A stretch of DNA of 64,000 nucleotides from Macrostomum lignano (Eukaryota): the NCBI GenBank assembly GCA_002269645.1, contig NIVC01001089.1:310001-374000 (forward strand), read 5' to 3'. Every line of letters starts with the position of its first letter. Position 1 is the stretch's first letter. Of this stretch, positions 13,666 to 64,000 are shown piece by piece. The position numbers and the translations under genes are program-made. The notes below the pieces were generated by a model. It was not told the DNA's origin. It searched no databases and was given only the letters and a program-made list of their open reading frames with translations.

Positions 13666-13724
13666 CCATAGACTAAGAACTAAAATCACCAGTTTGTCTG
13701 TGTGTACATTATCTCTGCCACGCC

Positions 13725-14844: not shown

Positions 14845-15278
14845 NNNNNNNNNNNNNNNNNNNNNNNNNNNNNNNNNNNNNNNNNNNNNNNNNNNNNNNN
14901 NNNNNNNNNNNNNNNNNNNNNNNNNNNNNNNNNNNNNNNNNNNNNNNNNNNNNNNNNNNNNNNNNNNNNNNNNNNNNNNNNNNNNNNNNNNNNNNNNNNN
15001 NNNNNNNNNNNNNNNNNNNNNNNNNNNNNNNNNNNNNNNNNNNNNNNNNNNNNNNNNNNNNNNNNNNNNNNNNNNNNNNNNNNNNNNNNNNNNNNNNNNN
15101 NNNNNNNNNNNNNNNNNNNNNNNNNNNNNNNNNNNNNNNNNNNNNNNNNNNNNNNNNNNNNNNNNNNNNNNNNNNNNNNNNNNNNNNNNNNNNNNNNNNN
15201 NNNNNNNNNNNNNNNNNNNNNNNNNNNNNNNNNNNNNNNNNNNNNNNNNNNNNNNNNNNNNNNNNNNNNNNNNNNNNN
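14845..15278. other. Assembly gap (434 N)
   Basis: Run of n. Confidence 1.
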
Positions 15279-15330
15279 TTTTAGGATACGGAAGCTCGAG
15301 GATTAGGAAGATCAGGTAAAGTGAATTTAC

Positions 15331-15689
15331 CTGAAGTCATTAATCCAGGATTAAGACACGCACCTACGGGAGGAGGTCAAAGGCAAAAAAGAAGAGGGCA
15401 GGTGAGATACCGCTGCCAGAGCTGAAGACAAAAAAAAAGACAGAGGAGACTTAAAAGCAGAAGGCAATCCAGAGAGGCTAAAAAACGAATTAGGAAGGGA
15501 AGGAAAGGGAGAGTCAGACTGAGCGATCGAGATTGAGAAATGATATGCAAATGAGGAGTTGGAAAGGGCTGATCTAAAGCAGATGCTTATTAAAGCTGCC
15601 TTAGAGATACTGGCGCAGGATGCAGGAAAGCCACAGTTACAGGGTAAAATATCTCTGCTTAGCGACTAACTAACTAACTAACTAACTAG

Positions 15690-15745
<56 letters not shown>

Positions 15746-15767
15746 TTAACCAACTAACTAACTAACC

Positions 15768-15810
<43 letters not shown>

Positions 15811-15816
15811 CAACTG

Positions 15817-15885
<69 letters not shown>

Positions 15886-15891
15886 TTAACC

Positions 15892-15925
<34 letters not shown>

Positions 15926-16084
15926 TTAACCAACTAACTAACTAACCAACTAACTAACTAACTAACTAATTAACTCACTAACTAACTAACTAATTAACTA
16001 ACTAACTAACTAACTAACTAATTAACTAACTAACTAACTAATTAGTTAAATAACTAATTAACTAATTAACTAACTAACCAACTG

Positions 16085-16117
<33 letters not shown>

Positions 16118-16458
16118 TTAGTTAAATAACTAATTAACTAACAGACTTACTAACAGACTAACTAATTAACTAATTAAATAACTAACAGACTAACTAACAG
16201 ACTAACTAACTAACTAAAAACAAGAGCCGTGGGAGAAGACTCACCAGGAGCTGCATCGGCCGATGCGGCAAAAGATGGAAGCTGTTGGGTGTCCATCAAA
16301 TCGACGAATGCATCCCGCAGATCTTCTAGCTGAGTAGAGCATTTAATTAGCCGGGCTACCTGTTCCGAGAGCTCGACGAGATCGGATAGCAGCTGCTCCT
16401 CGGCAGCGCAGGACTCAGTGCTGGCAGTCTGGAAGTCTGGCATGCTAGAGGCGGAAGT
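15331..16458 (-). CDS. Two exons of an unidentified gene with an acidic helical segment; probably continues into the gap
   Basis: Exon 16458-16245 (acceptor cttcccacAG, open frame with ATG at 16443, donor GTGAGT, phase 1) and 33-nt exon 15363-15331 (long polypyrimidine tract, GACLNPGLMTS, donor GTAAAT) are phase-compatible. Confidence 0.4.
15665..16216. repeat. (CTAA)n microsatellite, reverse complement of the array at 1-700
   Basis: Continuous actaactaac. Confidence 0.97.
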
Positions 16459-17484
16459 CTGTGGGAAGAGTTTTGATGAGAGATAACAAAACTGATTAAT
16501 TAGCTGTTTTTTAATTCAGCAGCGAAATGCAGCTTGGAACGGGGATTTGTACCTGTTTGGTAGACTTCGGAAATTAATATTGATGGGGCGAGGGCTCAAT
16601 TTAAAATTGACTTAGACACCAACTAAAGCTAGAGCCATCTCCGTATCTGTCTGTTTGTCTGTCTTAGTGTCTGTCTGTCTGTCTGTCTTTCTGTCTGTGT
16701 CTGTCTTTCTGTCTGTTTGTCTGTTTTTCGGTCTATTTGACCAGCCTCCTGTCTATCTGTCAGCAGGTGTCCGCATACCTGCCTGACTGTATGCAAAGCT
16801 AAATTTGATCAATCTACTTATTTATCCACAAGTTTTTCTGTCAGCAGCTTACCTGTCTGTCTGCCAGTATTCACTCTCACAGCTACCCGGTTCCAAGCAA
16901 GCAAGCGTTAAACTTAGCCAACTATAAGCAGCTAATCCCAGCGCCAAGAGAGGCATAACATAACGGCAGGGAACGGGGAAGAGGGATATCTGGGACAGAG
17001 GGGACAACTGTGAGAGCGCCGTGGTTGGCCAGTTTCTCACAGGGACAGCCAGAAGGCTGTACAATGACCCAGCCGCGAAGGACAAAGTTCGCTAGCTGAA
17101 AGGCATAAAATATTTCAGCACCCCTGTGCGTGTCTGCAGTCGCCTATCATGAATAATAGCATTAGGCTCGGCCGGAGCACAGCTTAAACCTATTATCGAA
17201 ATAATAATTGGCTTGCATTACTGCAAAATTTGCCCAAAATTTCAATTCTATACGCAACGCTTTGCACGCGATAGAAAAATTATTCTTTTTTCTATTTCGA
17301 TGAAGAACTTTCGTTGCCGAGGCGAGGCGGGAAGTTTTTGACAAGCAGTAAATGCTGAACTCACTTCCCAAGTTAATTTATCACTCATCAGGAGCTGACT
17401 GCCTGGGGTAGGGTTCTGGTGAAACACAAAACATGCTTGTGTACTTTGTTAACACTGAAGCTCGTTGCAGAGTGCGGAACACTC

Positions 17485-17940
17485 CCATATCTCATCTCTC
17501 CTATCTCACTATCTATTTCACTCTCCCATATCTCTATTCATCTCACCCACTCATATCTCATCTCCCCAATCTCTCTATCCATCTCACTCTCTCATGTCCC
17601 TAATCTCTCTATCCATCTCTCTCCTATATCTCATCTCCCCAATCTCTCTATCCATCTCACTCTCCCATCTCTTATCTCCCCAATCTCTCTATCCATCTCA
17701 CTCTCCCATCTCTTATCTCCCCAATCTCTCTATCCATCTCACTCTTCCCTCTCTCATCTCCCAATCTCTCTATCCATCTCACTCTCCCCTCTCTCATCTC
17801 CGCAATCTCTCTATCCATCTCACTCTCTCATGTCCCCAATCTCTCTATCCATCTCTCTCCTATATCTCATCTCCCCAATCTCTCTATCCATCTCACTCTC
17901 CCATCTCTCATCTCCCCATCTTTCTATCTATTTCACTCTC
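17485..17940. repeat. About 41-bp pyrimidine-rich minisatellite
   Basis: Recurring ccccaatctctctatccatctcactctcccatctc. Confidence 0.9.
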
Positions 17941-18171
17941 ATTTCAATTTGGATGACCAAGTAAATCTCTCCGCTAATACAACCTAATCTAATTTTCTAT
18001 ACAGGCCATCGTGTCCATCGCTTGTCTCCAAGCATATTGCATGCATCCTGACTTTCATGCATTAAGCATCAACACCTAATCAGTGACCCTAACACAGTAT
18101 TGAATTCAAAACACTGGCTTATGCGTGGGTTACTATCACAGTAAGTGAGCATGAAAGACAAGTGTGTTTTG

Positions 18172-47368: not shown

Positions 47369-50300
47369 GAGACAGTCCGATGCAGACTCACAAGGTGTGG
47401 GACAGTCCGATACAGACTCACAAGGTGTGGGACAGTCCGATACAGACTCACAAGGTGTGGGACAGTCCGATACAGACTCACAAGGTGTGGGACAGTCCGA
47501 TGCAGACTCTCAAGGTGTGGGACAGTCCGATACAGACTCACAAGGTGTGGGACAGTCCGATACAGACTCACAAGGTGTGGGACAGTCCGATACAGACTCA
47601 CAAGGTGTGGGACAGTCCGATACAGACTCACAAGGTGTGGGACAGTCCGATACAGACTCACAAGGTGTGGGACAGTCCGATACAGACTCACAAGGTGTGG
47701 GACAGTCCGATACAGACTCACAAGGTGTGGGACAGTCCGATACAGACTCACAAGGTGTGGGACAGTCCGATGCAGACTCTCAAGGTGTGGGACAGTCCGA
47801 TACAGACTCACAAGGTGTTGGGACAGTCCGATACAGACTCACAAGGTGTGGGACAGTCCGATGCAGACTCTCAAGGTGTGGGACAGTCCGATACAGACTC
47901 ACAAGGTGTGGGACAGTCCGATACAGACTCACAAGGTGTGGGACAGTCCGATGCAGACTCACAAGGTGTGGGACAGTCCGATGCAGACTCACAAGGTGTG
48001 GGACAGTCCGATGCAGACTCACAAGGTGTGGGACAGTCCGATACAGACTCACAAGGTGTGGGACAGTCCGATGCAGACTCACAAGGTGTGGGACAGTCCG
48101 ATACAGACTCACAAGGTGTGGGACAGTCCGATACAGACTCACAAGGTGTGGGACAGTCCGATGCAGACTCTCAAGGTGTGGGACAGTCCGATACAGACTC
48201 ACAAGGTGTGGGACAGTCCGATACAGACTCACAAGGTGTGGGACAGTCCGATACAGACTCACAAGGTGTTGGGACAGTCCGATACAGACTCACAAGGTGT
48301 GGGACAGTCCGATACAGACTCACAAGGTGTGGGACAGTCCGATACAGACTCACAAGGTGTGGGACAGTCCGATGCAGACTCACAAGGTGTGGGACAGTCC
48401 GATGCAGACTCTCAAGGTGTGGGACAGTCCGATGCAGACTCACAAGGTGTGGGACAGTCCGATGCAGACTCACAAGGTGTGGGACAGTCCGATGCAGACT
48501 CTCAAGGTGTGGGACAGTCCGATACAGACTCACAAGGTGTGGGACAGTCCGATACAGACTCACAAGGTGTGGGACAGTCCGATACAGACTCACAAGGTGT
48601 GGGACAGTCCGATACAGACTCACAAGGTGTGGGACAGTCCGATACAGACTCACAAGGTGTGGGACAGTCCGATACAGACTCACAAGGTGTGGGACAGTCC
48701 GATACAGACTCACAAGGTGTGGGACAGTCCGATACAGACTCACAAGGTGTGGGACAGTCCGATGCAGACTCTCAAGGTGTGGGACAGTCCGATACAGACT
48801 CACAAGGTGTTGGGACAGTCCGATACAGACTCACAAGGTGTGGGACAGTCCGATGCAGGCTCTCAAGGTGTGGGACAGTCCGATACAGACTCACAAGGTG
48901 TGGGACAGTCCGATACAGACTCACAAGGTGTGGGACAGTCCGATGCAGACTCACAAGGTGTGGGACAGTCCGATGCAGACTCACAAGGTGTGGGACAGTC
49001 CGATACAGACTCACAAGGTGTGGGACAGTCCGATGCAGACTCACAAGGTGTGGGACAGTCCGATACAGACTCACAAGGTGTGGGACAGTCCGATGCAGAC
49101 TCTCAAGGTGTGGGACAGTCCGATGCAGACTCACAAGGTGTGGGACAGTCCGATACAGACTCACAAGGTGTGGGACAGTCCGATACAGACTCACAAGGTG
49201 TTGGGACAGTCCGATACAGACTCACAAGGTGTGGGACAGTCCGATACAGACTCACAAGGTGTGGGACAGTCCGATACAGACTCACAAGGTGTGGGACAGT
49301 CCGATGCAGACTCACAAGGTGTGGGACAGTCCGATGCAGACTCTCAAGGTGTGGGACAGTCCGATGCAGACTCACAAGGTGTGGGACAGTCCGATGCAGA
49401 CTCACAAGGTGTGGGACAGTCCGATGCAGACTCTCAAGGTGTGGGACAGTCCGATACAGACTCACAAGGTGTGGGACAGTCCGATACAGACTCACAAGGT
49501 GTGGGACAGTCCGATACAGACTCACAAGGTGTGGGACAGTCCGATACAGACTCACAAGGTGTGGGACAGTCCGATACAGACTCACAAGGTGTGGGACAGT
49601 CCGATACAGACTCACAAGGTGTGGGACAGTCCGATACAGACTCACAAGGTGTGGGACAGTCCGATACAGACTCACAAGGTGTGGGACAGTCCGATGCAGA
49701 CTCTCAAGGTGTGGGACAGTCCGATACAGACTCACAAGGTGTTGGGACAGTCCGATACAGACTCACAAGGTGTGGGACAGTCCGATGCAGACTCTCAAGG
49801 TGTGGGACAGTCCGATACAGACTCACAAGGTGTGGGACAGTCCGATACAGACTCACAAGGTGTGGGACAGTCCGATGCAGACTCACAAGGTGTGGGACAG
49901 TCCGATGCAGACTCACAAGGTGTGGGACAGTCCGATACAGACTCACAAGGTGTGGGACAGTCCGATGCAGACTCACAAGGTGTGGGACAGTCCGATGCAG
50001 ACTCACAAGGTGTGGGACAGTCCGATACAGACTCACAAGGTGTGGGACAGTCCGATGCAGACTCTCAAGGTGTGGGACAGTCCGATGCAGACTCACAAGG
50101 TGTGGGACAGTCCGATACAGACTCACAAGGTGTTGGGACAGTCCGATACAGACTCACAAGGTGTGGGACAGTCCGATACAGACTCACAAGGTGTGGGACA
50201 GTCCGATGCAGACTCACAAGGTGTGGGACAGTCCGATACAAACTCACAAGGTGTGGGACAGTCCGATACAGACTCACAAGGTGTGGGACAGTCCGATACA

Positions 50301-50554
50301 GACTCACAAGGTGTGGGACAGTCCGATACAGACTCACAAGGTGTGGGACAGTCCGATGCAGACTCTCAAGGTGTGGGACAGTCCGATACAGACTCACAAG
50401 GTGTTGGGACAGTCCGATACAGACTCACAAGGTGTGGGACAGTCCGATGCAGACTCACAAGGTGTGGGACAGTCCGATACAGACTCACAAGGTGTGGGAC
50501 AGTCCGATACAGACTCACAAGGTGTGGGACAGTCCGATACAGACTCACAAGGTG
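47369..50554. repeat. 3.2-kb 30-bp minisatellite GACAGTCCGAT(A/G)CAGACTC(A/T)CAAGGTGTGG with higher-order structure
   Basis: 30-nt periodicity interrupted by seven +1 T units. Confidence 0.98.
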
Positions 50555-51669
50555 TCATAGCTCATATACGACTCAATATTGTCCTATATGACCCAGTGAG
50601 AAAACACACTCCATGTAAGTCAAATGTTTGTGTTCTTCTTTTCTCTCACTTTCTCTCTCTCTCTCTCTTTCTCTTTGACGATGTCTCAGATATCTAATGT
50701 CTCAGTTAAATGTCTCAGTTTTAATCAGTTAAAAAAGTAAAAGGTCCGATAGCCCTTGCTATAACCCTTGCTATGGGTTCCTAGTGGTCCTTGCGCGTGC
50801 CACTAGCCGGCTGCTTAAAACTTGTACTGTACCCTGAATACAAACTTTACTGAATAGCAGCACGTAAGTGTGCATTAGAATGGAATGAAATATTTATGAA
50901 TTATTCATAGTCAAGTAGTTTCCGTTAGCCAAGTCGTCATGGCCCGAAATACCCGCGCCATTCTCATCGCTATTATTGGAGCCTATTCAATGTACACTTG
51001 CTGGAATTGCCGCTCCGCCACGGGGAATTCCGCGGTTAGCCCTCGGTCATGCCGCAATGATTTACTGTCTTCTGGGGATAAATCCAAGGGCATTCCGCAG
51101 ATAATTCCAAGGGCATCCCAAGGAATTGCTTTGTAATTGCCTCCGAGTTTTTCTTAAACTGTGCTTTAACAAAATCTACTTTGAGAGAGTCGTCTTAATT
51201 AGCCTATCTGTCCATGCAAAAAATTGGTAAGTTTCAATTTAAACATCCCCTTTTGTTAAATTTTGTGTTTAACATGCAGAATACCGTAACTCTAACTAGC
51301 TTTATTAGATAATTGTTACAGGTGCTAATTCTTGTTCCAGCTTAGAGCTTTTTAAATAGATGTAAAAATTAAACTACTAAAATAGTTGTTTTAATTACCT
51401 TGCCGCCCAAGCCTTTGCTAAATTGTAGCACTATTTTTAGTTCCATGTTGCTTCTGTACACTTGTAGCAGTACACTGTCAAATGTAATGTAGATATCATA
51501 CTGTACATTGACTAGGGTATGACCGCCAACTGACGAAAAGTACATTTTATATGAAAATAAATTTTACTGCAAAGGACTTATCCGTTCGTTTTTTAATTGC
51601 TACTTAACAAAAAATCATAGCTGGAAAAAAACGAATCGATACTTCAAATTTCAACACTTCAGAATTAAG

Positions 51670-54600
51670 ATGTGTGAGCGTTTTGGCGAAATCCTTATTA
51701 TCATCATTTGCGCTGCAAGCATTCTAAGGTGAGTCTATTGCTGAAATGTCAAAGTAGGCCAATTTTTTTGCCAATTTGCCAATTCAACGCAAATTTGCGG
51801 TCATTTACAATGATTTAAGAAGACTTACACACACTAAATTACGTCTTTCAGCGCCACTGCTGGCGAACACCATTGCTACAACTCTCAAATGAATGAAATC
51901 GACATTGCCCAACGCCATCAAAAGGACGAGACCCTGATTGCGGAACTGGAACCAACCAGTGCTGCTATAAGAGTCTCGCACCCGACACCCACAAACTGTC
52001 AATGGGAGATTTCCTGCTCTGGACTGAGGCCAAATGCGTCAATGCAGATGGCACTCATTGCAGGCAGGTTCAACAGCAACATCGCCATGCGCTATCTGCT
52101 TGGTGAGCAGCAGTACGACGTTTATAACGGCCTGATGCACGGAATCACCCTGGGGAATGGGTGAGTACTAACGCTTGGAGTCTTGGGTTATCATGGTGTG
52201 AGACCAGCTAGCATCTAATCAGCACTCTGAGACAGTGTGAGACCAGCTAGCATCTAATCAGCACTCTGAGACAGTGTGAGACCAGCTAGCATCTAATCAG
52301 CACTCTGAGACAGTGTGAGACCAGCTAGCATCTAATTAGCACTCTGAGACAGTGTGAGACCAGCTAGCATCTAATTAGCACTCTGAGACAGTGTGAGACC
52401 AGCTAGCATCTAATCAGCACTCTGAGACAGTGTGAGACCAGCTAGCATCTAATTAGCACTCTGAGACAGTGTGAGACCAGCTAGCATCTAATCAGCACTC
52501 TGAGACAGTGTGAGACCAGCTAGCATCTAATCAGCACTCTGAGACAGTGTGAGACCAGCTAGCATCTAATTAGCACTCTGAGACAGTGTGAGACCAGCTA
52601 GCATCTAATTAGCACTCTGAGACAGTGTGAGACCAGCTAGCATCTAATTAGCACTCTGAGACAGTGTGAGACCAGCTAGCATCTAATTAGCACTCTGAGA
52701 CAGTGTGAGACCAGCTAGCATCTAATTAGCACTCTAAGACAGTGTGAGACCAGCTAGCATCTAATTAGCACTCTGAGACAGTGTGAGACCAGCTAGCATC
52801 TAATTAGCACTCTGAGACAGTGTGAGACCAGCTAGCATCTAATTAGCACTCTAAGACAGTGTGAGACCAGCTAGCATCTAATTAGCATTCTGAGACAGTG
52901 TGAGACCAGCTAGCATCTAATTAGCACTCTGAGACAGTGTGAGACCAGCTAGCATCTAATTAGCACTCTGAGTCAGTGTGAGACCAGCTAGCATCTAATT
53001 AGCATTCTGAGACAGTGTGAGACCAGCTAGCATCTAATTAGCACTCTGAGACAGTGTGAGAGACCAGCTAGCATCTAATTAGCACTCTGAGACAGTGTGA
53101 GACCAGCTAGCATCTAATTAGCACTCTGAGTCAGTGTGAGACCAGCTAGCATCTAATTAGCACTCTGAGTCAGTGTGAGACCAGCTAGCATCTAATTAGC
53201 ACTCTGAGACAGTGTGAGACCAGCTAGCATCTAATTAGCACTCTGAGACAGTGTGAGACCAGCTTACCCATTGTTGTTTTGCATACTACGAGCCTATTAT
53301 AGAACATATTTTATATATTTTATATATTACCAATGGTAACCGACCCAATCAACCTGCAGGAGCTGCATCATCAAGGTGTCGGCCTCCGTGAGCTCCCAGC
53401 ATCCTCCGGACCCACCCAGTCTAAGAGTGGTGCTGCTTCAACCCACGACCTGTGCTAGGGGCTTTCTCTATTATCAAGGCGGCTGCTACACAGCCAGTGG
53501 AAGCCGTCAGAGCTTCAAGGACTTCTCGAGCAGCATCCTGGGCTCTGCTCAGCTGGCCAGCTTCTCCAGCATGGCTGAGATCAGCAGCTTCATCACTGCG
53601 AGTAGGTAGAGTAGACATGGAGGATAGTGGAGTAGACATGGAGGATAGTGGAGTAGACATGAAGGATAGTGGAGTAGACATGGAGGATAGTGGAGTAGAC
53701 ATGGAGGATAGTGGAGTAGACATGGAGGATAGTGGAGTAGACATGGAGGATTAAAGCGGAGGGAAGCTGAGGTTGATGCAACAGAAAGTGATGAGAAAAG
53801 AAATAAAATATGAGAGCCATGAATAGAGATTTGACAAAACTTCAAAGTCCTTTGCCGAACTTTTCAGACATGGCCATCGTGCCGGACTATTGGCGACCCC
53901 TCAGCTTCACCCAGCCTGTCCGGATCGGTCTGTTCTACCGGACAGCCGATGCTGTCGTCCTGTCACTGGCCTCAAACTCCACCAGCTGCTGGCTACAGCC
54001 GGCGCCTCAGTTTAAACAATTTCGGTGAGCGTCCTGTATGTACTATCTGCACTCTCCGCCTATCCGCTCTCTCCTGACTGTGTGACTCACTCTCTAACTG
54101 TGTGACCCGCTCTCTGACTGTGTGACCCGCTCTCTGACTGTGTGACCCGCTCTCTGACTGTGTGACCCGCTCTCTGACTGTGTGACCCGCTCTCTGACTG
54201 TGTGACCCGCTCTCTGACTGTGTGACCCGCTCTCTGACTGTGTGACCCGCTCTCTGACTGTGTGACCCGCTCTCTGACTGTGTGACCCGCTCTCTGACTG
54301 TGTGACCCGCTCTCTGACTGTGTGACCCGCTCTCTGACTGTGTGACCCGCTCTCTGACTGTGTGACCCGCTCTCTGACTGTGTGACCCGCTCTCTGACTG
54401 TGTGACCCGCTCTCTGACTGTGTGACCCGCTCTCTGACTGTGTGACCCGCTCTCTGACTGTGTGACCCGCTCTCTCTCCTGACTGTGTGACCCGCTCTCT
54501 CTCCTGACTGTGTGACCCGCTCTCTCTCCTGCCTGTGTGACTCTCTCTCCTGCCTGTGTGACCCTCTCTTCTTCTGTCTGTGTGACCCTCTCTCTCCTGC

Positions 54601-56669
54601 CTGTGTGACTCTCTCTCTCTCCTGCCTGTGTGATTCTCTCTCTCCTGTCTGTGTGATTCTCTCTCCTGCCTGTGTGACTCTCTCTCTCCTGTCTGTGTGA
54701 TTCTCTCTCCTGTCTGTGTGACTCTCTCTCTCCTGCCTGTGTGATTCTCTCTCTCCTGTCTGTGTGATTCTCTCTCCTGCCTGTGTGACTCTGTCTCTCC
54801 TGCCTGTGTGACTCTCTCTCTCATGTCTGTGTGATTCTCTCGCCCGCCTGTGTGACCCTCTCTCCTGTCTGTGTGATTCTCTCTCCTGCCTGTGTGACCC
54901 TCTCTCCTGTCTGTGTGATTCTCTCTCCTGTCTGTGTGACCCTCTCTCTCCTGTCTGTGTAAGCGATAGCTTACTGATAGTAAAGCTATTTGAGCATGGC
55001 GCGAATTCCTCACATGGTGGACTAGAAAATGTCGCAATGTGCAAGGGCGCATAAATAGCAGTTCCACTCAGCTGGCTAGAGGTGGAGCCGACCTCGTGTG
55101 GCTATGACTGACTGACGAGGGCAAAAAAGCCCGAATCCGGTCTCAGTCTGCCCCGCATGGTTCGATCCCTACTTTTAGCCGCTGATAGTCAGTGTGACCC
55201 TCTTTCTCCTGTCTGTGTGACTCTCTCTCTCCTGCCTATGTGACTCCTCTCTCCTGTCTGTGTGACTCTCTCTCTCCTGCCTGTGTGACCCTCTCTCCTG
55301 TCTGTGTGATTCTCTCTCCTGCCTGTGTGACCCTCTCTCCTGTCTGTGTGATTCTCTCTCCTGTCTGTGTGACCCTCTCTCTCCTGTCTGTGTGACCCTC
55401 TCTCTCCTGTCTGTGTGACCCTCTCTCTCCTGCCTATGTGACTCTCTCTCTCTCCTGTCTGTGTGACCCTCTCTCTCCTGTCTGTGTGACCCTCTCTCTC
55501 CTGTCTGTGTGACTCTCTCTCTCCTGCCTATGTGACTCTCTCTCTCCTGCCTGTATGACCCGCTCTCTCCTGTCTATGTGATTCTCTCTCCTGTGTGTGT
55601 GACTCTCTCTCTCCTGCCTGTGTGACCCTCTCTCCTGTCTGTGTGATTCTCTCTCCTGTCTGTGTGACCCTCTCTCTCCTGTCTGTGTGACCCTCTCTCT
55701 CCTGCCTATGTAACTCTCTCTCTCTCTCCTGTCTGTGTGACTCTCTCTCTCCTGCCTATGTGACCCTCTCTCTCCTGTCTGTGTGACTCTCTCTCTCCTG
55801 CCTATGTGACTCTCTCTCTCCTGCCTGTATGACCCGCTCTCTCCTGTCTATGTGACTCTCTCTCTCTCCTGTCTGTGTGACTCTCTCTCTCCTGCCTGTG
55901 TGACTCTCTCTCTCCTGTCTGTGTGACTCTCTCTCTCTCCTGTCTGTGTGACTCTCTCTCTCCTGCCTGTGTGACTCTCTCTCTCCTGTCTGTGTGACCC
56001 TCTCTCTCCTGTCTGTGTGACTCTCTCTCTCCTGTCTGTGTGACTATCTCTCCTGTCTGTGTGACCCTCTCTCTCCTGTCTGTGTGACCCTCTCTCTCCT
56101 GCCTATGTGACTCTCTCTCTCCTGCCTATGTGACTCTCTCTCTCCTGTCTGTGTGACCCTCTCTCTCCTGTCTGTGTGACTCTCTCTCTCTTGTCTGTGT
56201 GACTCTCTCTCTCCTGCCTGTATGACCCGCTCTCTCCTGCCTGACTACATGTAATCCACTGTCTCTGCCTCTGTCCAAATGTGTACCAAACATCTCTGGA
56301 ATCTATATTTTCTATACTCGCCCTTAATACACTGCTTTGTTCATTTTCAGGGTGGCCAATGGATCAGAAGGCTTGCTCTGCGGATCTCTAAAGCAGCTGG
56401 ACTCGAGTTCATCGAACTTCAGCATCGAATTCGTAGCTTGCTCCACTCTGTTTCGGTCTCTGGTCAGCTTCCCAGTGAGTGGCAGATCGCAGAGTCGCTC
56501 AGCTTTGTCTTGCGACTTTCTTCGGCTTGAACGTCAACATTCAGTAGCTGACACGCAGCCTCCGGACCCGATGGAGTCCAAGTTGAAAGCGCAGACGCCG
56601 TTGTCAAGGACGCTAATTATCGTTTTCATTGTTGTGGTTCTCGTAGCTGCACGGTGTTCTGCGGTGTGA
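51670..56669 (+). CDS. Paralog 2 of the CUB-like/C-type-lectin-like surface protein, ending in a hydrophobic segment with almost no tail; exons 51670-51728, 51852-52160, 53360-53601, 53868-54024, 56351-56669
   Basis: Same exon count and phases (2,2,1,2) and same 59-nt first exon as paralog 1. TNCQWEI (CUB-like); CARGFLYYQGGCYT, RIGLFY (WIGL-like), LLCGSL...C; LIIVFIVVVLVAARCSAV-stop. Confidence 0.75.
52196..53264. repeat. 39-bp intronic minisatellite GTGTGAGACCAGCTAGCATCTAAT(T/C)AGCACTCTGAGACA (paralog 2 intron 2)
   Basis: 39-nt periodicity; same unit at 58099-58505. Confidence 0.97.
53608..53750. repeat. 21-bp intronic minisatellite GAGTAGACATGGAGGATAGTG (paralog 2 intron 3)
   Basis: Tandem units just after the donor at 53602. 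Confidence 0.93.
54961..55191 (+). mobile_element. 231-bp non-coding insertion, retrozyme or Penelope pseudo-LTR-like
   Basis: Unique sequence interrupting the array; removing it restores ctgtgtgaccc; GTGT flanks both sides (ambiguous within a repeat); contains a hammerhead motif. Confidence 0.7.
55106..55148 (+). ncRNA. Minimal type I hammerhead ribozyme motif with one core substitution
   Basis: GACTGA (stem I) CTGACGA (core) GGGC-AAAAAA-GCCC (stem II) GAAT (expected GAAA) CCGG (palindromic stem III) TC (cleavage) TCAGTC (stem I complement). Confidence 0.75.
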
Positions 56670-57686
56670 TCTACTGGGTGTACACACGTTTAAAGTGATA
56701 TTGTAACGCATCGAATAGACAGAGCAACTTTAAAGTCGTTCCTGACATTGAACAATCATTGTAGTGAAGAGGATGCACTTTTTTAAACCTGAGTTATCAT
56801 CTTCTTTTTTCCTACTCTTAGTAGCCTGTTCTGGGTTTTTCTTATTTATTCTAGGGTCTTTTTTAATATTGTTTAGACATATAATGTACTTATTCTGATA
56901 AATGTCTTTGCCAAGCTGTTTAGGTCTAAAGGTCAATCTTTTAGGGCCGATTTTGATATTCGATCACCTATTAAGCTCCTTGGGGTCTGAGAGGTCGCCC
57001 GGTAGACGCTTGGCCCGGTCTACTTACTCTCCTTCCGTTTCATCGCATTAATGTATCGTGCTCATCAGTGTATACAAATCGTTTAATATATATTACTATT
57101 TAGTACTATTAAATTACAGTTAGCTAATGTATTTAGACAAAGGTTGCAGTGAGAGCTTTTTCGAAAAAAAACTTTTTCTGACATCCCTTCTAGTCAGAAA
57201 CCCGATTTCAAGACAGCTGAAAACTAATTGGAAATTTTCGGGAAACCCCAGCTTGCTTTTGTCCTTCATTCGTTACTCTGTAAAACAATGTATTTGCTTA
57301 ATGCTCATTGTCTGATTCTAATAATTTGTTTTAAGCAACAAATTGATGGAAAACAGCGCTGGTCAAGGTGAAGTATTATAGTTGATCTTACGAGCTAAAA
57401 TAAATTATATTCAAAACTAATTTTTTCAATATAATTCTGTTCACATGTGCAGTATATCCTGTAGATGCTGGCTAAAATGCATGTAATTTACTTACAGCTA
57501 GCTACAGGTAGTCACATGCTGACGAATTTGCGATAAAATCAAAGTTAAAGTCAGCGAATTCCACTGCTGCTTTGAAATTTTGAAATGAGTGCCAAATTGA
57601 ATTCTCTCCGTTAGTCGGGCAGGCGCGCAAATAAAAATGCGAACTTCATCTGTAGGACATGAAAATTGAAAGTGATAAAAGAGACG

Positions 57687-60600
57687 ATGGAGCGTCTTCA
57701 TCAGCTACTAGGACTGCTTTTAGTCTGCTTCCGGGTCACCGGAGCCAGCATTGACTGCTCAGCTGAGCAGCGCACAGGTGAGTGGAGTCTGAGCTTACCT
57801 GCCTCAAACAGATCTATTGGTAGATACTATGAAATATGTTGCAGTGACAGTGCAGCTGAGCAGGGCTGACGTTCTGCGCACCTGGCAACCCAGCGGTGCG
57901 CACTGCCGTTGGTGGGAGAGTCGGCAGTCAGAGACAAACCGATTCCCTGCTGCTGTGCGGTCCGGGCCTCGGTGGCTTGTGATGCAGCTGAGGCAGCCGA
58001 TGATGCTGGAGGCGGTGAGCTTGCGAGACTGGGGTGAGTGACGCTGACCGACTCATTCTCATGATGCATGATGAGGCAGAGGGAGTCTGGGACACAGAGT
58101 GTGAGACCAGCTAGCATCTAATTAGCACTCTGAGACAGTGTGAGACCAGCTAGCATCTAATTAGCACTCTGAGACAGTGTGAGACCAGCTAGCATCTAAT
58201 TAGCACTCTGAGACAGTGTGAGACCAGCCAGCATCTAATTAGCACTCTGAGACAGTGTGAGACCAGCTAGCATCTAATAAGCACTCTGAGACAGTGTGAG
58301 ACCAGCTAGCAACTAATTAGCACTCTGAGACAGTGTGAGACCAGCTAGCTTCTAATTAGCACTCTGAGACAGTGTGAGACCAGCTAGCTTCTAATTAGCA
58401 CTCTGAGACAGTGTGAGACCAGCTAGCATCTAATTAGCACTCTGAGACAGTGTGAGACCAACTAGCATCTAATTAGCACTCTGAGACAGTGTGAGACCAG
58501 CTAGCAGCCAAGCACTCGTGTTGCAGATGGCCAGTGGCACGTAGCAGCTCTGGTCGGCTCGCCCGTGTCAGCGGTCGGAGCCTCGAGCCTTCCGCTGGAG
58601 CTGCAGCTGGAGGACCCGTGCCGCGCCAGCTGGGAGACCTTCAGCACCAGAGGCCGCTGGAAGCGGGTCGTAGCCGGCAGTCAAGCTCTCATCTCTTTCA
58701 TCAGACTGACCAGCGAGAGCTCATTGAGTTGGCAAGCGTTGAGCATCACAGGTGAGCTTAAGTTTATATTTTTGCACACTGATTAGTGCTCTGATCCAGT
58801 AGCCTTTCCTCATCAGGCCGACAGCCACCGGTGCGGCTGAACGCAAGGCTGTCAAGCAAATACCTGAGCCACAGCTACGGCTTGATGGTCAGACGCAAGG
58901 TCCAGTCAAGAATTGCACTTTTTATCGATAGCTGCATCGGCAACAGGATTGTGTGCTGGCTTCTGCGATCTGAGGGCAGACTGAGCGCTGTGCATGTGAG
59001 CTTGTCAACTGTGCGACACCGCACAGGTGCATGTAAAGCCATCTTTAGTTAGTAATCCTTGCGTCTTTGCAGATTGCCTCGTCTACCGGTAATCAGCTTC
59101 AGCAGACCGGAGTACGGACAGCCAAGTTCGAGCTGGTCATTGGAGAAGGCGACCATGACAGTGTGGCGCAGTGCGCTCTGGCTGGGGACAGTCCAGGGAC
59201 AGAGACTGTCCTACTTGAGGAGCCTCTGCTGTGGGAAGGTGTGTAGAGTTTGCTTTGGAATTGGTCTAAGCTGTAGGCTTGCATATTGCACGTATTGCAG
59301 AGAATCTAATAATAGATTCTAATAATCTAATAATCTATATGTTAACTCATTAACACATCCCAGTTCCAGCCAGAACTTTGAATTTGTCGGTGTCGCAAAT
59401 TTTAATCATCGGTTTTGAGGCGGTAGTCAGCCTCACTTCGGAGTCATTTCCAGAGGCTCGACATCGGTGCTCTATCAATAGGTCGCGTGGGTCGCATAGA
59501 AATCTGTCGATTACTCGCCAGGTGAATTTTGATTGCTTTGCCTTTCATTTGCTTTAGGAAACTGCATGCAGTTTATAGCCATAACCTACAGTAGATTTCC
59601 ATTGATGGTGGCTCCAAGGGAGTCAAAGTGTCATATATCTGAATCCTGAATCAAACGCTGGTTTCAATGCGAAAATTTTGTGTAATGTCTCAAAATTTTC
59701 AGAAGATCTCCCGAGCAATCGATTTAAGGAATCGAGCAGTTATCAGAGTTCAGTCGGAGTTCAGGTTCACATTGGAGGCTGCCGATCTCGGTGGCGAAAT
59801 TGTCTGCTCGGGAGAAGTCGTCTCGAACCCGAGCGTGACGGAGAAGTTTCCGCTATTGAGAATCAGCGGTACGCGAAACTATTGTATATAAATTTAGCCC
59901 TCTGGGGCGTCAAAGTGGTTGCTGGGAAACTGCTAAAATTACGGGTGCCATAAAAGTTTCAAGAAGATCCTTGCCCTCACACCGTGCTACGCTGTTGACC
60001 CTGGTATAATGTTAATGGGGCTAACACGGATGTTAATGGGGCTAACACGGATGCTAAGAAGGCTAATACGGATGTTACTCGTAATGGCGCTAACACGGAT
60101 ATTAATGGCGCCTTTCTGCATGTTCCATGACGCCTATTAGGATGTTACTGGCGCTAACACGGATGTTAATAGCGCTAACACGGATGTTAATGACGCTAAC
60201 ACGGATGTTAATGACGCCTATTAGAATTTTCATGAGGCTAACGCGGATGTTAATAGGGATAACAAGGTTGTTAATGGGGCTAACACAGATGTTAATGGGG
60301 CTAACACAGATGTTAATGGGGATAACACGGATGTTAATCAGGCTAAGACGATGTTAATGGGGCTAACACGGATGTTAATGGGGATAACAAGGATGTTAAT
60401 GGGGCTAACACAGATGTTAATGGGGATAACACGGATGTTAATGGGGCTAACACAGATGTTAATGGGGATAACACGGATGTTAATCAGGCTAAGACGATGT
60501 TAATGGGGCTAACACGGATGTTAATGGGGATAACAAGGATGTCAATGGGGCTAACAAGGATGTTAATGGGGATAACACGGATGTTAATGGGGCTAACACA

Positions 60601-63600
60601 GATGTTAATGGGGATAACACGGATGTTAATCAGGCTAAGACGATGTTAATGGGGCTAACACGGATGTAAGCGCCAAAACAGATGTTAATGGGGCTAACAC
60701 GGATGTTACTGGCGCCAAAACGGATGTTAATGGCGCTAACACGGATGTTAATGACGCCTATTAGAATTTTAATGGCGTCAATTTTCATGGTAACCCGCAG
60801 AGCCATGTCAGACAACGGCAGACCTTGGTGAACGCCGACACTGGCAGGTGGGCGAGGCGTGGTGGATAGTGGTCACATCCAAAAATTGCAGCATCTGGAA
60901 TGTGAGCCACAGCTGTCAGCTAATCATTCCAACGGGTGCAGGTGACGAACATCTCTTAGCTGTACCAATTTGGACAGTTCAAGTAAGCGTAATTTTTTAA
61001 CGCTAAATTTAGAAGAACTTTTAGCTATTAGGGAGAAAAACTGATGCTCTAATTATCTAATTATTGATTATTAACATCCAGGTGGAAAGTTTCTCGAGCA
61101 CCCACGCGTTGCTAGTGAACGAAGCGATGTCTCAGAATCGCTGGAAGATTCTGTGCAGCATCAATCAGTCTGCAGTTGCTTATCCAGACTTGGAGGTGCG
61201 CTCCGCCTCCGCCCCAGCTGTATTTGGTGAGTGACTTCAGGTGCTTAAAATGCCTGAGACTATTTTGAGCTCAATTTGCATGCCGTATAATATGTACTTC
61301 CCAACCGGTATACTTCAGGCTATACGAGTACTTTGCTTTCGTTTCTGGTTTTAACTTTGCTTCAATATGCCATTCACTCTCTTTTTGCCTTTTGTCTTTT
61401 TTGTCTCTCACTCTCCTATTTGTATCCCACTCTACTATTTGGTCTTTGACTCTCCTATTTGGTCTTTGACTCTCCTATTTGGTCTTTGACTCTACTATTT
61501 GGTCTTTGACTCTCCTATTTGGTCTTTGACTCTCCTATTTGGTCTTTGCCTCTCCTATTTGGTCTTTGCCTCTCCTATTTGGTCTTTGACTCTCCTATTT
61601 GGTCTTTGACTCTCCTATTTGGTCTTTGACTCTCCTATTTGGTCTTTGACTCTCCTATTTGGTCTTTGACTCTCCTATTTCTATTTGGTCTTTGACTCTC
61701 CTATTTCTATTTGGTCTTTGACTCTCCTATTTCTATTTGGTCTTTGACTCTCCTATTTGGTCTTTGACTCTCCTATTTGGTCTTTGACTCTCCTATTTCT
61801 ATTTGGTCTTTGACTCTCCTATTTCTATTTGGTCTTTGACTCTCCTATTTGGTCTTTGACTCTCCTATTTGGTCTTTGACTCTCCTATTTCTATTTGGTC
61901 TTTGACTCTCCTATTTCTATTTGGTCTTTGACTCTCCTATTTCTATTTGGTCTTTGACTCTCCTATTTGGTCTTTGACTCTCCTATTTGGTCTTTGCCTC
62001 TCCTATTTGGTCTTTGCCTCTCCTATTTGGTCTTTGACTCTCCTATTTGGTCTTTGCCTCTCCTATTTGGTCTTTGACTCTCCTATTTGGTCTTTGACTC
62101 TCCTATTTGGTCTTTGACTCTCCTATTTGGTCTTTGACTCTCCTATTTGGTCTTTGACTCTCCTATTTGGTCTTTGACTCTCCTATTTGGTCTTTGACTC
62201 TCCTATTTCTATTTGGTCTTTGACTCTCCTATTTCTATTTGGTCTTTGACTCTCCTATTTCTATTTGGTCTTTGACTCTCCTATTTGGTCTTTGACTCTC
62301 CTATTTGGTCTTTGACTCTCTTATTTCTATTTGGTCTTTGACTCTCCTATTTCTATTTGGTCTTTGACTCTCCTATTTGGTCTTTGACTCTCCTATTTGG
62401 TCTTTGACTCTCCTATTTCTATTTGGTCTTTGACTCTCCTATTTCTATTTGGTCTTTGACTCTCCTATTTGGTCTTTGACTCTCCTATTTGGTCTTTCTC
62501 CTATTTGGTCTTTGACTCTCCTATTTGGTCTTTGACTCTCCTATTTGGTCTTTGACTCTCCTATTTGGTCTTTGACTCTCCTATTTGGTCTTTGACTCTC
62601 CTATTTGGTCTTTGACTCTCCTATTTGGTCTTTGACTCTCCTATTTGGTCTTTGACTCTCCTATTTGGTCTTTGACTCTCCTATTTGGTCTTTGACTCTC
62701 CTATTTGGTCTTTGACTCTCCTATTTGGTCTTTGACTCTCCTATTTGGTCTTTGACTCTCCTATTTGGTCTTTGCCTCTCCTATTTGGTCTTTGACTCTC
62801 CTATTTGGTCTTTGACTCTCCTATTTGGTCTTTGACTCTCCTATTTGGTCTTTGACTCTCCTATTTGGTCTTTGACTCTCCTTTTTGGTCTTTGCCTCTC
62901 CTATTTGGTCTTTGACTCTCCTATTTGGTCTTTGACTCTCCTATTTGGTCTTTGACTCTCCTATTTGGTCTTTGACTCTCCTATTTGGTCTTTGACTCTC
63001 CTATTTGGTCTTTGACTCTCCTATTTGGTCTTTGACTCTCCTATTTGGTCTTTGACTCTCCTATTTGGTCTTTGACTCTCCTATTTGGTCTTTGACTCTC
63101 CTATTTGGTCTTTGACTCTCCTATTTCTATTTGGTCTTTGACTCTCCTATTTCTATTTGGTCTTTGACTCTCCTATTTCTATTTGGTCTTTGACTCTCCT
63201 ATTTGGTCTTTGACTCTCCTATTTGGTCTTTGACTCTCCTATTTCTATTTGGTCTTTGACTCTCCTATTTCTATTTGGTCTTTGACTCTCCTATTTGGTC
63301 TTTGACTCTCCTATTTGGTCTTTGACTCTCCTATTTGGTCTTTCACTCTCTTTTTGTACTTTACTCTTTCATTGTGCTTTACCCTTCCCTTTCTTTGATT
63401 TTATACTTTTCTCCTATTCATAACTGCTCAAGGTTCTCCCTGCAACCCATTGCTATTTATCTTCTAGGAGCAGCGCACAGAGCCAGTCTGAATGTTCTAG
63501 TTGAGCATCTGTGCAGCAATACGTTAAAAGTGCAGGCCAGTGTAAAATATCGGCATTACACTCTACCTGTAACGAATGTCACCTGCCAGATTGTTGGCAG

Positions 63601-64000
63601 TTCCGAGGTAGGAGAGGATCAACTACAACTATCAAATAGTCTATTCAGTGTTTTCTAATCAGAACTTCACGAGCGACTAAAACAAACTTAGCAGGACCTG
63701 ACGATGCAACGAACAAGCCGGGACACCTGGAGTGCTCTCACTACCTGGTCTGACCTCGGGTCTCAGCCAAATCTCTTGGTGCGATGCATGGCTCTGCAGT
63801 TGTACTTTGGCGAGCTGGTCTTTAAAACAACAGCTGAGGCCAGTGTAACTGCTGAAAGATGCTTTTGTGAGCTGCCTTCGTCTAAAAAATGTCACTCAAA
63901 AATGTCACAAAGCACTGAGTATTCGGATTTTTAATTCCTTAATGTTTGCCCCCCCCTCAGGCGCGAACAAAAAGAAGCTGATTCATTACGCAATGACAGC
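57687..64000 (+). CDS. Secreted or surface protein: signal peptide, F-type-lectin/discoidin-like domain, at least 4 atypical Ig-like repeats; continues beyond window. Exons 57687-57777, 57845-58033, 58527-58751, 58817-58995, 59073-59238, 59364-59521, 59703-59868, 60801-60982, 61082-61226, 63468-63607, 63692-63866, 63961-end
   Basis: Eleven consecutive GT-AG introns with compatible phases (1,1,1,0,1,0,1,0,1,0,1) and no stop. MERLHQLLGLLLVCFRVTGA signal peptide; RWLVMQLRQPMMLEAVSL and SFIRLT; VQSEFRFTLEAADLGGEIVCSG (C2-set Ig-like E-F strands). Confidence 0.75.
58099..58505. repeat. Second array of the 39-bp unit, in intron 2 of the lectin-Ig gene
   Basis: Same unit as 52196-53264. Confidence 0.96.
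60010..60770. repeat. 21-bp intronic minisatellite GATGTTAATGGGG(C/A)TAACACG
   Basis: Tandem units. Confidence 0.92.
61430..63345. repeat. 1.9-kb intronic minisatellite of 20-bp units TTTGGTCTTTGACTCTCCTA with clustered 26-bp (+TTTCTA) variants
   Basis: 20-nt periodicity. Confidence 0.97.

What the first reader, a model, noticed from the sequence alone, without database searches (positions are those of the whole stretch)
57687..64000. Unrecognised lectin-like plus multi-Ig protein assembled from 12 or more short exons
Eleven introns in a row fit in phase without a stop, which is unlikely by chance. Exons 2-3 resemble an F-type lectin/discoidin jelly roll; then four two-exon (phase 1-0-1) modules resemble Ig-like domains. 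Lectin-Ig fusions are known invertebrate recognition molecules (mollusc FREP/CREP/GREP have Ig first); I do not recognise this order and domain type.
Basis: partly seen in the sequence, partly recalled or inferred. Interest (0 to 1): 0.7.

Follow-up and report, generated by a model that had tools for sequence, protein, structure and literature searches.

The report
Flatworm Ig receptor with homogenised head
This is a real, already annotated but unstudied gene of the flatworm Macrostomum lignano for a membrane receptor with four Ig-like domains. Its N-terminal "head" shows no detectable lectin relationship, but part of it is kept almost identical among many otherwise very different sister genes, apparently by DNA copying between them.

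Summary
Twelve GT-AG exons on the + strand (57687-64000) splice into an open 618-codon frame. It is 100% identical to the NCBI protein BOX15_Mlig007224g1 of Macrostomum lignano (744 aa, 13 exons; the last 1.3 exons lie beyond the window).

The protein has a signal peptide, a ~150-aa head, four two-exon Ig-like modules (phases 1-0-1), a transmembrane helix and a ~105-aa tyrosine-bearing tail.

The Ig reading is supported. AlphaFold gives pLDDT 75-94 for modules 2-4, and Foldseek's top matches are SYG-2, KIT, ICAM-5 and CD22.

The lectin reading is not supported. Pfam, PDB profile searches and an exhaustive HMMER search of 1.84 billion proteins gave no lectin hit. The F-type fucose motif is absent. 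AlphaFold could not fold the head (pLDDT 36), so its fold stays open.

The family has 43 protein clusters, all from M. lignano, partly in tandem arrays.

One result is new. Exon 2, intron 2 with its 39-bp minisatellite, and the first ~115 nt of exon 3 are 94-98% identical at DNA level among eight copies compared pairwise (a ninth lacks the exon-3 part) on three contigs. The rest of the genes is unalignable as DNA and 25-49% identical as protein. The few differences look neutral. The most likely cause is gene conversion, as in vertebrate paired receptors.

The parts
57687..57777 (+). Exon 1: start codon and signal peptide (MERLHQLLGLLLVCFRVTGA|S...), ending in phase 1
   Evidence: The hydrophobic core and small residues before the SIDCS motif were read from the sequence. 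Exon 1 is homologous among paralogues but diverged.
57845..58033 (+). Exon 2: first half of the head (residues 32-94). It is the 5' part of the homogenised block.
   Evidence: 94.6-99.5% nt identity to 8 other copies on two further contigs. Peptide 93-98% identical in 10 paralogues, 75% in one and a partial match in one.
58034..58526 (+). Intron 2: 64-nt 5' unique part, 39-bp minisatellite (58098-58506, 10.5 copies) and 20-nt 3' unique part. It is conserved among paralogues as strongly as the flanking exons.
   Evidence: The 5' part is 93-100% identical and the 3' part 100%. Repeat copy number ranges from 1.7 to 33.7 among copies.
58527..58751 (+). Exon 3: second half of the head (residues 95-169). 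Only its first ~115-138 nt belong to the homogenised block. Most paralogues have an extra intron shortly after the block end that this gene lacks.
57845..58645 (+). Homogenised DNA block (exon 2 + intron 2 + 5' part of exon 3), shared by paralogues on at least 3 contigs
   Evidence: Pairwise identity 93.8-97.9% (mean 96.3%) over 387 non-repeat nt in 8 copies. Intron 1, the rest of exon 3, intron 3 and exon 4 show no nucleotide similarity. Differences from the consensus: 10 synonymous and 34 non-synonymous, against a neutral expectation of 24-26% synonymous.
58817..59238 (+). Exons 4 (58817-58995) and 5 (59073-59238): Ig-like module 1 (residues 170-284), phases 1-0-1
   Evidence: (beta strands, pLDDT 50-70 only)
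59364..59868 (+). Exons 6 (59364-59521) and 7 (59703-59868): Ig-like module 2 (residues 285-392), with Cys320 and Cys370
   Evidence: (pLDDT 75-94)
60801..61226 (+). Exons 8 (60801-60982) and 9 (61082-61226): Ig-like module 3 (residues 393-501). It is the best conserved Ig module of the family (EPC..DLG..W...CSIWNVSHSC...).
   Evidence: (30-49% identity among paralogues)
63468..63866 (+). Exons 10 (63468-63607) and 11 (63692-63866): Ig-like module 4 (residues 502-606), the most divergent module
63961..64000 (+). Start of exon 12 (runs to window-equivalent 64061): juxtamembrane segment and transmembrane helix. Exon 13, the cytoplasmic tail, lies at equivalent 65941-66258.
   Evidence: (helix 608-639)
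60009..60753 (+). 21-bp minisatellite filling most of intron 7
61399..63350 (+). 20-bp minisatellite (about 92 copies) filling most of intron 9

Best explanation
The region holds the first 12 of 13 exons of a Macrostomum lignano gene, BOX15_Mlig007224g1. It encodes a type I membrane receptor of the immunoglobulin superfamily. The protein has a signal peptide, a ~150-residue cysteine-containing head of unknown fold with a weak all-beta tendency, four Ig-like domains each split over two exons, one transmembrane helix, and a ~105-residue tail carrying tyrosine motifs (YDVP, YINW).

The gene is one member of a family seen only in M. lignano. The family has 43 protein clusters and is partly arranged in tandem arrays.

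Shown here: the DNA for the membrane-distal two thirds of the head, including the intron between its two exons and a 39-bp minisatellite, is nearly identical among paralogues. The Ig stalks, the introns and the tails have diverged beyond DNA alignment.

Inferred: this pattern is kept up by repeated gene conversion confined to the homologous block, perhaps helped by the recombination-prone minisatellite.

Also inferred: the head is the shared ligand- or partner-binding module. The same recognition event would then be wired to different stalks and at least four different cytoplasmic tail types, as in vertebrate paired receptors (Siglec-5/14, Siglec-11/16, CEACAM1/3). The ligand is unknown, and carbohydrate binding is not indicated by any test.
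For: Gene model and identity.

Ig superfamily ectodomain.

Transmembrane helix and tail.

Family restricted to M. lignano.

Tandem clusters: six head blocks in 97 kb of NIVC01001776.1 and two in NIVC01000712.1.

Block homogenisation: exon 2 is 94.6-99.5% identical, the intron-2 unique parts 93-100%, and the first ~115 nt of exon 3 91-96%. The flanking intron 1, the rest of exon 3, intron 3 and exon 4 give no nucleotide match. At protein level exon 2 is 93-98% identical in most paralogues, against 25-49% for the Ig modules.

Substitutions inside the block are 10 synonymous to 34 non-synonymous, which is the neutral ratio. Recent DNA-level copying therefore explains the identity better than protein-level purifying selection.

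The head predates the homogenisation. Exon 1 and the head's C-terminal third are homologous but diverged in all paralogues. One paralogue, P0042 (A0A1I8I804), has a head only 35% identical over its whole length.

All four tail classes carry the block.

Precedent: conversion limited to the ligand-binding exon region, with relaxed constraint, is documented for paired receptors (PMC5701461, PMC2832619).
Against: No expression or protein data were available here.

The head did not fold in AlphaFold2. It could therefore be partly disordered, or its reading frame less important than assumed.

One copy has a 5-nt deletion in exon 2 (L001 55680), and the neutral substitution pattern gives no positive evidence of protein-level constraint on the block.

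The 5' boundary of the block falls within a few nucleotides of the exon-2 acceptor in all copies, which is sharper than a naive conversion model predicts.

The tail motifs, including an ITIM-consensus SVYLVL in some members, are regex matches only.

M. lignano is a recent polyploid, so some 'paralogues' may be homeologues. This does not affect the contrast between the block and the rest of the gene.
Confidence: 0.6

Rival explanations
1. The head is a jelly-roll carbohydrate-binding domain (F-type lectin or discoidin-like), and the protein is a lectin-Ig pattern-recognition molecule.
For: The head has the right size (~150 aa). Its low-confidence model is mostly beta. By eye it has a 'P-x-W-L-V-x-Q-L ... 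hydrophobic hairpin' and a terminal strand pair reminiscent of galactose-binding-like domains; this is my reading of the sequence. One 93-aa family fragment is named 'F5/8 type C domain-containing' by UniRef.
Against: Pfam gives no lectin or discoidin match at E<=10 for 23 family proteins, including that fragment. PDB profile searches are empty. The exhaustive HMMER search finds no relative outside the family. The F-type motifs are absent in all 43 proteins. UniRef names for this family are mutually inconsistent (PLAT, SRCR, RHD, DUF2531 and others) and none is reproduced by Pfam.
Confidence: 0.15
2. The head is a fifth, highly divergent Ig-like (V-like) domain, so the protein is simply a five-Ig adhesion molecule.
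For: The two Cys conserved across the whole family, including the diverged P0042, lie 74 residues apart (Cys51, Cys125). That spacing is typical of V-set domains (textbook knowledge). The head is beta-rich, and it is followed by phase-1 module boundaries like the Ig modules.
Against: There is no Ig signal for the head in Pfam, PDB or AlphaFold. hhalign of the head against the family's own Ig2 and Ig3 profiles gives probability <1%. That test has no power, however, because Ig2 against Ig3 also fails. At 150 aa the head is long for an Ig domain.
Confidence: 0.15
3. The conserved block is not maintained by gene conversion. Either it is a recently spread mobile or exon-shuffled cassette, or it is conserved for a non-coding or antisense function.
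For: The boundary at the exon-2 acceptor is sharp in all copies. The intron is at least as conserved as the exons. A 96-aa antisense ORF (57827-58117) spans exon 2 and the intron's unique part and is open in 7 of 9 copies. The same 39-mer array occurs elsewhere in the window (52196-53264).
Against: The parts of the head outside the block, and exon 1, are homologous but old in every paralogue, and P0042 keeps a diverged version of the block-encoded part. The block therefore replaces pre-existing homologous sequence, which is what conversion does. No inverted repeats flank the block. The antisense ORF has no Pfam match and no conserved ends. Rfam finds nothing. The unique intron parts occur only inside block copies.
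Confidence: 0.1
4. The locus is a decaying or non-functional member of a rapidly turning-over family, and the long open frame is a young remnant.
For: Substitutions in the block follow the neutral pattern. At least one paralogue has a frameshift. Many fragmentary gene models exist.
Against: The frame is open for 744 codons over 13 exons with all splice sites canonical. The signal peptide, the paired cysteines in the Ig modules, the transmembrane helix and the tail are all intact.
Confidence: 0.05

Closest known systems
Multi-Ig type I cell-surface receptors and adhesion molecules (SYG-2/nephrin, KIT ectodomain, ICAM-5, CD22, nectin, SIRP)
   Same: Tandem Ig-like beta-sandwiches followed by one transmembrane helix and a tyrosine-bearing tail. 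The best structural matches are SYG-2 D1-D4 at E 1.2e-12, plus KIT, ICAM-5 and CD22. Domain boundaries are in phase 1, as in classical IgSF genes.
   Different: Sequence similarity is about 10% identity in the structural alignments, with no Pfam Ig hit for this protein. Each Ig module is split by a phase-0 intron. The N-terminal domain is an orphan ~150-aa head, not an Ig V-set domain. There are no orthologues outside M. lignano.
Vertebrate paired receptors homogenised by gene conversion (Siglec-11/16, Siglec-5/14, CEACAM1 with CEACAM3-like partners)
   Same: The membrane-distal, presumed ligand-binding exon region, including adjacent intron, is kept nearly identical among family members. Stalks, transmembrane segments and cytoplasmic signalling tails differ. 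The converted exons show relaxed constraint (PMC5701461, PMC2832619).
   Different: Here the block is shared by at least 9 copies on 3 contigs and by dozens of gene models, not by pairs. The homogenised domain is not an Ig V-set domain. A minisatellite sits inside the converted tract. No activating adaptor-type charged transmembrane residue was seen, and the inhibitory or activating nature of the tails is untested.
Invertebrate lectin-Ig immune molecules (mollusc FREP/CREP/GREP, amphioxus VCBP)
   Same: They combine Ig-like domains with a different recognition domain. They are lineage-restricted, expanded and clustered families.
   Different: Here the non-Ig domain comes first, matches no lectin family in any test, and the protein is membrane-anchored.
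F-type lectin domain / discoidin (F5/8 type C) domain
   Same: Similar length (~140-150 aa), a beta-rich prediction, and a superficially similar hydrophobic hairpin motif seen by eye.
   Different: No profile match. The fucose motif HX24RXDX4(R/K) and the Ca motif are absent (motif from PMC5712786). No confident jelly-roll model was obtained.

Membership tests
Immunoglobulin superfamily (multi-Ig type I membrane receptor) | Ig-like beta-sandwich fold of the repeated ~105-115-aa modules | tested here: met
   AlphaFold2 gives pLDDT 75-94 for residues 285-606 and 50-70 for module 1. Foldseek against PDB gives 403 hits at E<=1e-3, topped by multi-Ig ectodomains.
Immunoglobulin superfamily (multi-Ig type I membrane receptor) | Sequence-profile match to an Ig family (Pfam I-set, V-set, C2-set and similar) | tested here: not met
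   0 Pfam families at E<=10 for this protein. Only 2 of 29 relatives give a weak C2-set_2 hit, at E=0.0024, below the curated threshold.
Immunoglobulin superfamily (multi-Ig type I membrane receptor) | Pair of cysteines ~50-65 residues apart in each module (B-F strand disulfide) | tested here: inconclusive
   Candidate pairs read from the sequence are C320/C370, C422 or C431/C476, and C516/C579. Module 1 has C208 or C215/C262. Bonding was not verified.
Immunoglobulin superfamily (multi-Ig type I membrane receptor) | Signal peptide, single transmembrane helix, cytoplasmic tail | tested here: met
   N-terminal hydrophobic leader. Helix 608-639 in the model. Hydropathy peak at 612-630 and a ~105-aa tail.
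F-type lectin domain | Fucose-binding motif HX24RXDX4(R/K) and Ca motif h2DGx (PMC5712786) | tested here: not met
   The regex scan of 43 family proteins found no strict match anywhere. The two loose matches lie outside the head, and the head has no Ca motif. Some true F-type domains do deviate from the motif.
F-type lectin domain | Profile match (Pfam/HMM) or F-type jelly-roll fold | tested here: not met
   No Pfam hit at E<=10. No PDB sequence hit. The fold itself could not be assessed because the model is unreliable (pLDDT 35.9).
Discoidin / F5/8 type C domain | Profile match to PF00754-type models | tested here: not met
   No hit at E<=10 in 23 family proteins, including the fragment that UniRef names 'F5/8 type C domain-containing'.
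Discoidin / F5/8 type C domain | Distorted jelly-roll beta-barrel with N- and C-terminal cysteines bridged | not testable with these tools
   AlphaFold2 gave no confident head model, and both structure-prediction jobs are used. The head has Cys24, Cys51 and Cys125 but no C-terminal Cys.
Paired-receptor-type families with concerted evolution of the binding domain | Near-identity of the distal ectodomain exon(s) plus adjoining intron among members that are otherwise divergent | tested here: met
Paired-receptor-type families with concerted evolution of the binding domain | Members with opposing signalling tails (ITIM versus an activating adaptor-coupling transmembrane segment or ITAM) | tested here: inconclusive
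   Four tail classes exist. One carries an ITIM-consensus SVYLVL. There is no ITAM and no charged mid-membrane residue. These are regex results only.
Paired-receptor-type families with concerted evolution of the binding domain | Shared ligand specificity of the homogenised domain | not testable with these tools
   Needs binding experiments.

The most novel reading that the evidence does not exclude
A free-living flatworm has evolved its own large family of surface receptors. A previously unseen recognition domain is kept uniform across dozens of genes on different chromosomes by minisatellite-associated gene conversion. Stalks and signalling tails diversify around it. This would be an invertebrate, non-Ig-headed counterpart of vertebrate paired or decoy immune receptors, possibly serving immunity, allorecognition or gamete and partner recognition.
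Probability: 0.25. Interest if true: 0.7.

Novelty: new variant of a known kind. Interest (0 to 1): 0.5.

Why it matters
Flatworm innate immunity and cell recognition are poorly known, and M. lignano is a genetic model with RNAi and transgenesis. A lineage-specific, clustered receptor family is a concrete candidate recognition system to test. The family also shares an orphan head that current profile and structure-prediction tools cannot place.

The locus is also a clean natural example of concerted evolution restricted to two exons and their intron. A hypervariable minisatellite sits inside the tract, which makes the link between minisatellites and ectopic gene conversion directly testable.

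Against that, the gene is already in public annotation as a hypothetical protein. Its Ig part is ordinary, and no function is shown.

Tried and rejected
- My first splice model used the first good-looking donors of exons 4 and 8 and broke the frame. I corrected it.
- I looked for paralogues inside the window with tblastn and found none. The downstream neighbour on the contig is not a family member.
- Pfam on the protein, on 29 relatives and on fragments gave nothing usable.
- PDB sequence searches with the protein and with two head profiles gave only chance hits, to an EP3 receptor, chymotrypsin-C and DDX52.
- AlphaFold2 of the head alone failed, and Foldseek on that model was meaningless.
- hhalign of the head against Ig2 and Ig3 profiles had no power, because the Ig2-versus-Ig3 control also failed.
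- A search with the diverged head paralogue P0042 found no further relatives, and its locus is not in the assembly index.
- Rfam on the block gave only a sub-threshold snoRNA-like hit on the minus strand (16.7 bits against a cut-off of 40).
- I looked for inverted repeats that might mark a transposon around the block and found none.
- My guess that the upstream exon-like ORFs at 51.8-54 kb encode CUB or C-type lectin domains is not supported by Pfam.
- Literature searches for the locus tag, for Macrostomum Ig families and for Macrostomum gene conversion found nothing relevant.
- In some searches a BLAST database accidentally held both L001 and L002. I repeated the analysis per locus, and only those results are used.
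Full report

Yes. Reading 57000-64000 and listing open segments in the three forward frames gave a chain of short open segments bounded by GT and AG.

My first chain, using the most obvious donors, broke the frame after exon 4 and after exon 8. Choosing CAT|gtgagc at 58995 and CAA|gtaagc at 60982 restored a single open frame.

The model has 12 exons: 57687-57777, 57845-58033, 58527-58751, 58817-58995, 59073-59238, 59364-59521, 59703-59868, 60801-60982, 61082-61226, 63468-63607, 63692-63866 and 63961-64000. Eleven GT-AG introns of 65-2241 nt separate them. The frame is open for 618 codons.

The translation is 100% identical, over its full length, to NCBI 'hypothetical protein BOX15_Mlig007224g1 [Macrostomum lignano]', 744 aa. 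The window is therefore part of contig NIVC01001089.1 of assembly GCA_002269645.1. There the gene continues with the rest of exon 12 (to window-equivalent 64061) and a last exon 13 (65941-66258). The three long introns are filled by minisatellites: a 39-mer in intron 2, a 21-mer in intron 7 and a 20-mer in intron 9.

**2. What the protein is**

The full protein has these parts:
- a hydrophobic leader;
- a head of about 150 residues (21-170);
- four modules of 105-115 residues (170-284, 285-392, 393-501, 502-606);
- a hydrophobic helix (about 608-639);
- a ~105-residue tail with YDVP and YINW motifs.

Pfam recognises nothing at E<=10, and PDB sequences give nothing.

I ran AlphaFold2 with a 29-sequence family alignment. 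It gave confident beta-sandwiches for modules 2-4 (pLDDT 75-94), a weaker one for module 1 (50-70), a long helix for the membrane segment, and no structure for residues 1-201. Foldseek against PDB returned 403 matches at E<=1e-3. The top matches were multi-Ig ectodomains: SYG-2 D1-D4 at 1.2e-12, then KIT, ICAM-5, CD22, nectin-1 and SIRP.

The protein is a type I membrane receptor, not a secreted lectin.

**3. The head: lectin or not?**

Every test I could run was negative or uninformative.
- Pfam at E<=10 on 23 family proteins gave no lectin or discoidin match. This includes the fragment that UniRef calls 'F5/8 type C domain-containing'.
- Profiles of the head (alignments A3 and A4) found only chance hits among PDB sequences.
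- An exhaustive hmmsearch of the head profile against 1.84 billion representative proteins found 22 proteins. Twenty-one are M. lignano family members. The other is a metagenomic repeat protein matching a 30-residue low-complexity stretch.
- The F-type lectin fucose motif HX24RXDX4(R/K) and its calcium motif, as defined in PMC5712786, are absent from the head of all 43 family proteins.
- AlphaFold2 on the head alone gave pLDDT 35.9. Its strands were low-confidence and Foldseek found no match.
- A profile-profile comparison of the head with the family's own Ig2 and Ig3 modules was negative. So was the Ig2-versus-Ig3 control, so that test has no power.

The head is nonetheless a real, old domain. 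A diverged paralogue, P0042 (UniProt A0A1I8I804), aligns over the whole head at 35% identity. It conserves two cysteines (Cys51, Cys125) and a set of hydrophobic and proline positions.

My verdict is that 'lectin-like' is a resemblance by eye and is not supported. The fold remains open; it could be a jelly roll, a V-like Ig domain or something new.

**4. A species-restricted, clustered family**

All 43 protein clusters retrieved are labelled M. lignano. UniRef gives them a scatter of mutually inconsistent names (Ig-like, PLAT, SRCR, RHD, DUF2531 and others). Pfam does not reproduce any of them.

A 97-kb stretch of contig NIVC01001776.1 (L001) carries six head-encoding copies. A 24-kb stretch of NIVC01000712.1 (L003) carries two. 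The window itself holds only one member.

Family members fall into at least four cytoplasmic tail classes:
- YDVP...YINW;
- AYDYP...SVYLVL, which fits the ITIM consensus;
- YEDPDxYxxI;
- an acidic tail ending GHYDLDGxTFVxY.

**5. The unexpected feature: a homogenised DNA block**

Domain-by-domain BLAST showed a strong contrast. The exon-2 peptide is 93-98% identical in ten paralogues, 75% in one and a partial match in one. The Ig modules are only 25-49% identical, or not detectably similar.

At DNA level:
- similarity starts within a few nucleotides of the exon-2 acceptor;
- it runs through exon 2 at 94.6-99.5%;
- it continues through the 64-nt 5' unique part of intron 2 (93-100%), the 39-bp minisatellite and the 20-nt 3' unique part (100%);
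- it ends about 115-138 nt into exon 3 (91-96%).

Intron 1, the rest of exon 3, intron 3 and exon 4 give no nucleotide match at all. Over 387 non-repeat nucleotides, eight copies from three contigs are 93.8-97.9% identical pairwise (mean 96.3%). Tandem neighbours are no more alike than copies on different contigs. The minisatellite varies from 1.7 to 33.7 units.

Differences from the block consensus are 4 synonymous and 16 non-synonymous in exon 2, and 6 and 18 in exon 3. The neutral expectation is 24-26% synonymous. The near-identity is therefore a matter of recent DNA copying. It does not come from purifying selection filtering amino-acid changes, and the intron is if anything better conserved than the exons.

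Exon 1, the head's C-terminal third and the diverged P0042 head show that an old homologous head existed before. The simplest mechanism is therefore repeated gene conversion confined to the block. Once the flanks have diverged beyond recognition, heteroduplex cannot extend into them, which would sharpen the boundaries.

In most paralogues an additional short intron follows 25-45 nt after the block. The window gene has lost that intron.

**6. Rivals for the block**

A mobile cassette is unlikely. I found no flanking inverted repeats. The unique intron parts occur only inside block copies, and the block replaces homologous sequence rather than adding to it.

A 96-aa antisense ORF (57827-58117) covers exon 2 and part of the intron and is open in 7 of 9 copies. 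It is Ala/Ser-rich, has no Pfam match and has no conserved ends. I regard it as a by-product of the GC-rich exon. Rfam finds no RNA family.

**7. How it most likely works**

Shown: the gene structure, the IgSF ectodomain, the membrane anchoring, the family restriction and the block homogenisation.

Inferred: the membrane-distal head is the common binding module. Keeping it uniform while stalks and tails diverge couples one recognition event to different outputs. Vertebrate paired receptors work this way. Gene conversion keeps the ligand-binding exon region of Siglec-11/16 and of CEACAM1 with its partners alike, under relaxed constraint (PMC5701461, PMC2832619).

Membership in that functional class cannot be claimed. 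The tail motifs are only pattern matches and no ligand is known.

**8. Novelty and score**

The gene is in GenBank as a hypothetical protein. I found no paper on it or on the family. An IgSF receptor is a known kind. The orphan head and the many-member concerted evolution with a minisatellite inside the tract make it a new variant of that kind. It is of moderate interest (0.5). It would be of more interest if the head proves to be a new fold, or if the family proves to be a flatworm recognition system.

Noticed in passing
window 52196-53264 (flanks 51851-52162 and 53361-53605): A second array (27 copies) of the same 39-bp minisatellite as in intron 2 of the gene. It lies 4.4 kb upstream, between exon-like open segments bounded by gt (52163) and ag (53360) on the + strand. 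No gene is called there in the assembly's gene list for this stretch. The spliced peptide has no Pfam match.
   Followed up: partly
window 1-64000: The window is extraordinarily rich in minisatellites: 68 TRF rows. Examples are a 30-mer x106 at 47371-50555, a 31-mer x70 at 10607-12686, a 23-mer x98 at 54067-56243 and a 20-mer x92 at 61399-63350. Many appear to sit in introns.
   Followed up: no
window 57827-58117, minus strand: A 96-aa antisense ORF covers all of exon 2 and the conserved 5' part of intron 2. The same frame is open in 7 of 9 paralogous copies. It is Ala/Ser-rich and has no Pfam hit.
   Followed up: partly
window 57845-58033: Exon 2 is open or nearly open in all three forward frames. 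Several UniProt gene models of paralogues (for example P0004, P0027, P0036) read it in a different frame (…CALPLVGESAVRDKPIPCCCAVRASVACDAAEAADDAGG…). This probably reflects indels in an older assembly.
   Followed up: no
L001 55680-55863: One paralogous copy has a 5-nt deletion inside exon 2 that shifts the frame. It is a pseudogene or an assembly error.
   Followed up: no
L001 10001-87216: The annotated gene for P0009 spans 77 kb because two nearly identical 3' halves exist (about 12014-17990 and 80217-87213). A segmental duplication inside the cluster seems to have confused the gene call.
   Followed up: no
window 58646-58751 versus paralogues (alignment A7): Relative to most paralogues, the window gene lacks the short intron that normally follows the homogenised block. 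Its exon 3 is a fusion of two ancestral exons.
   Followed up: partly
proteins P0001-P0043: UniRef names of family members are mutually inconsistent: Ig-like, PLAT, SRCR, RHD, VWFD, protein kinase, DUF2531, F5/8 type C, Bgal_small_N, ASH, VASt, Vitellogenin. The Pfam scans here reproduce none of them, so they should not be used as evidence.
   Followed up: yes
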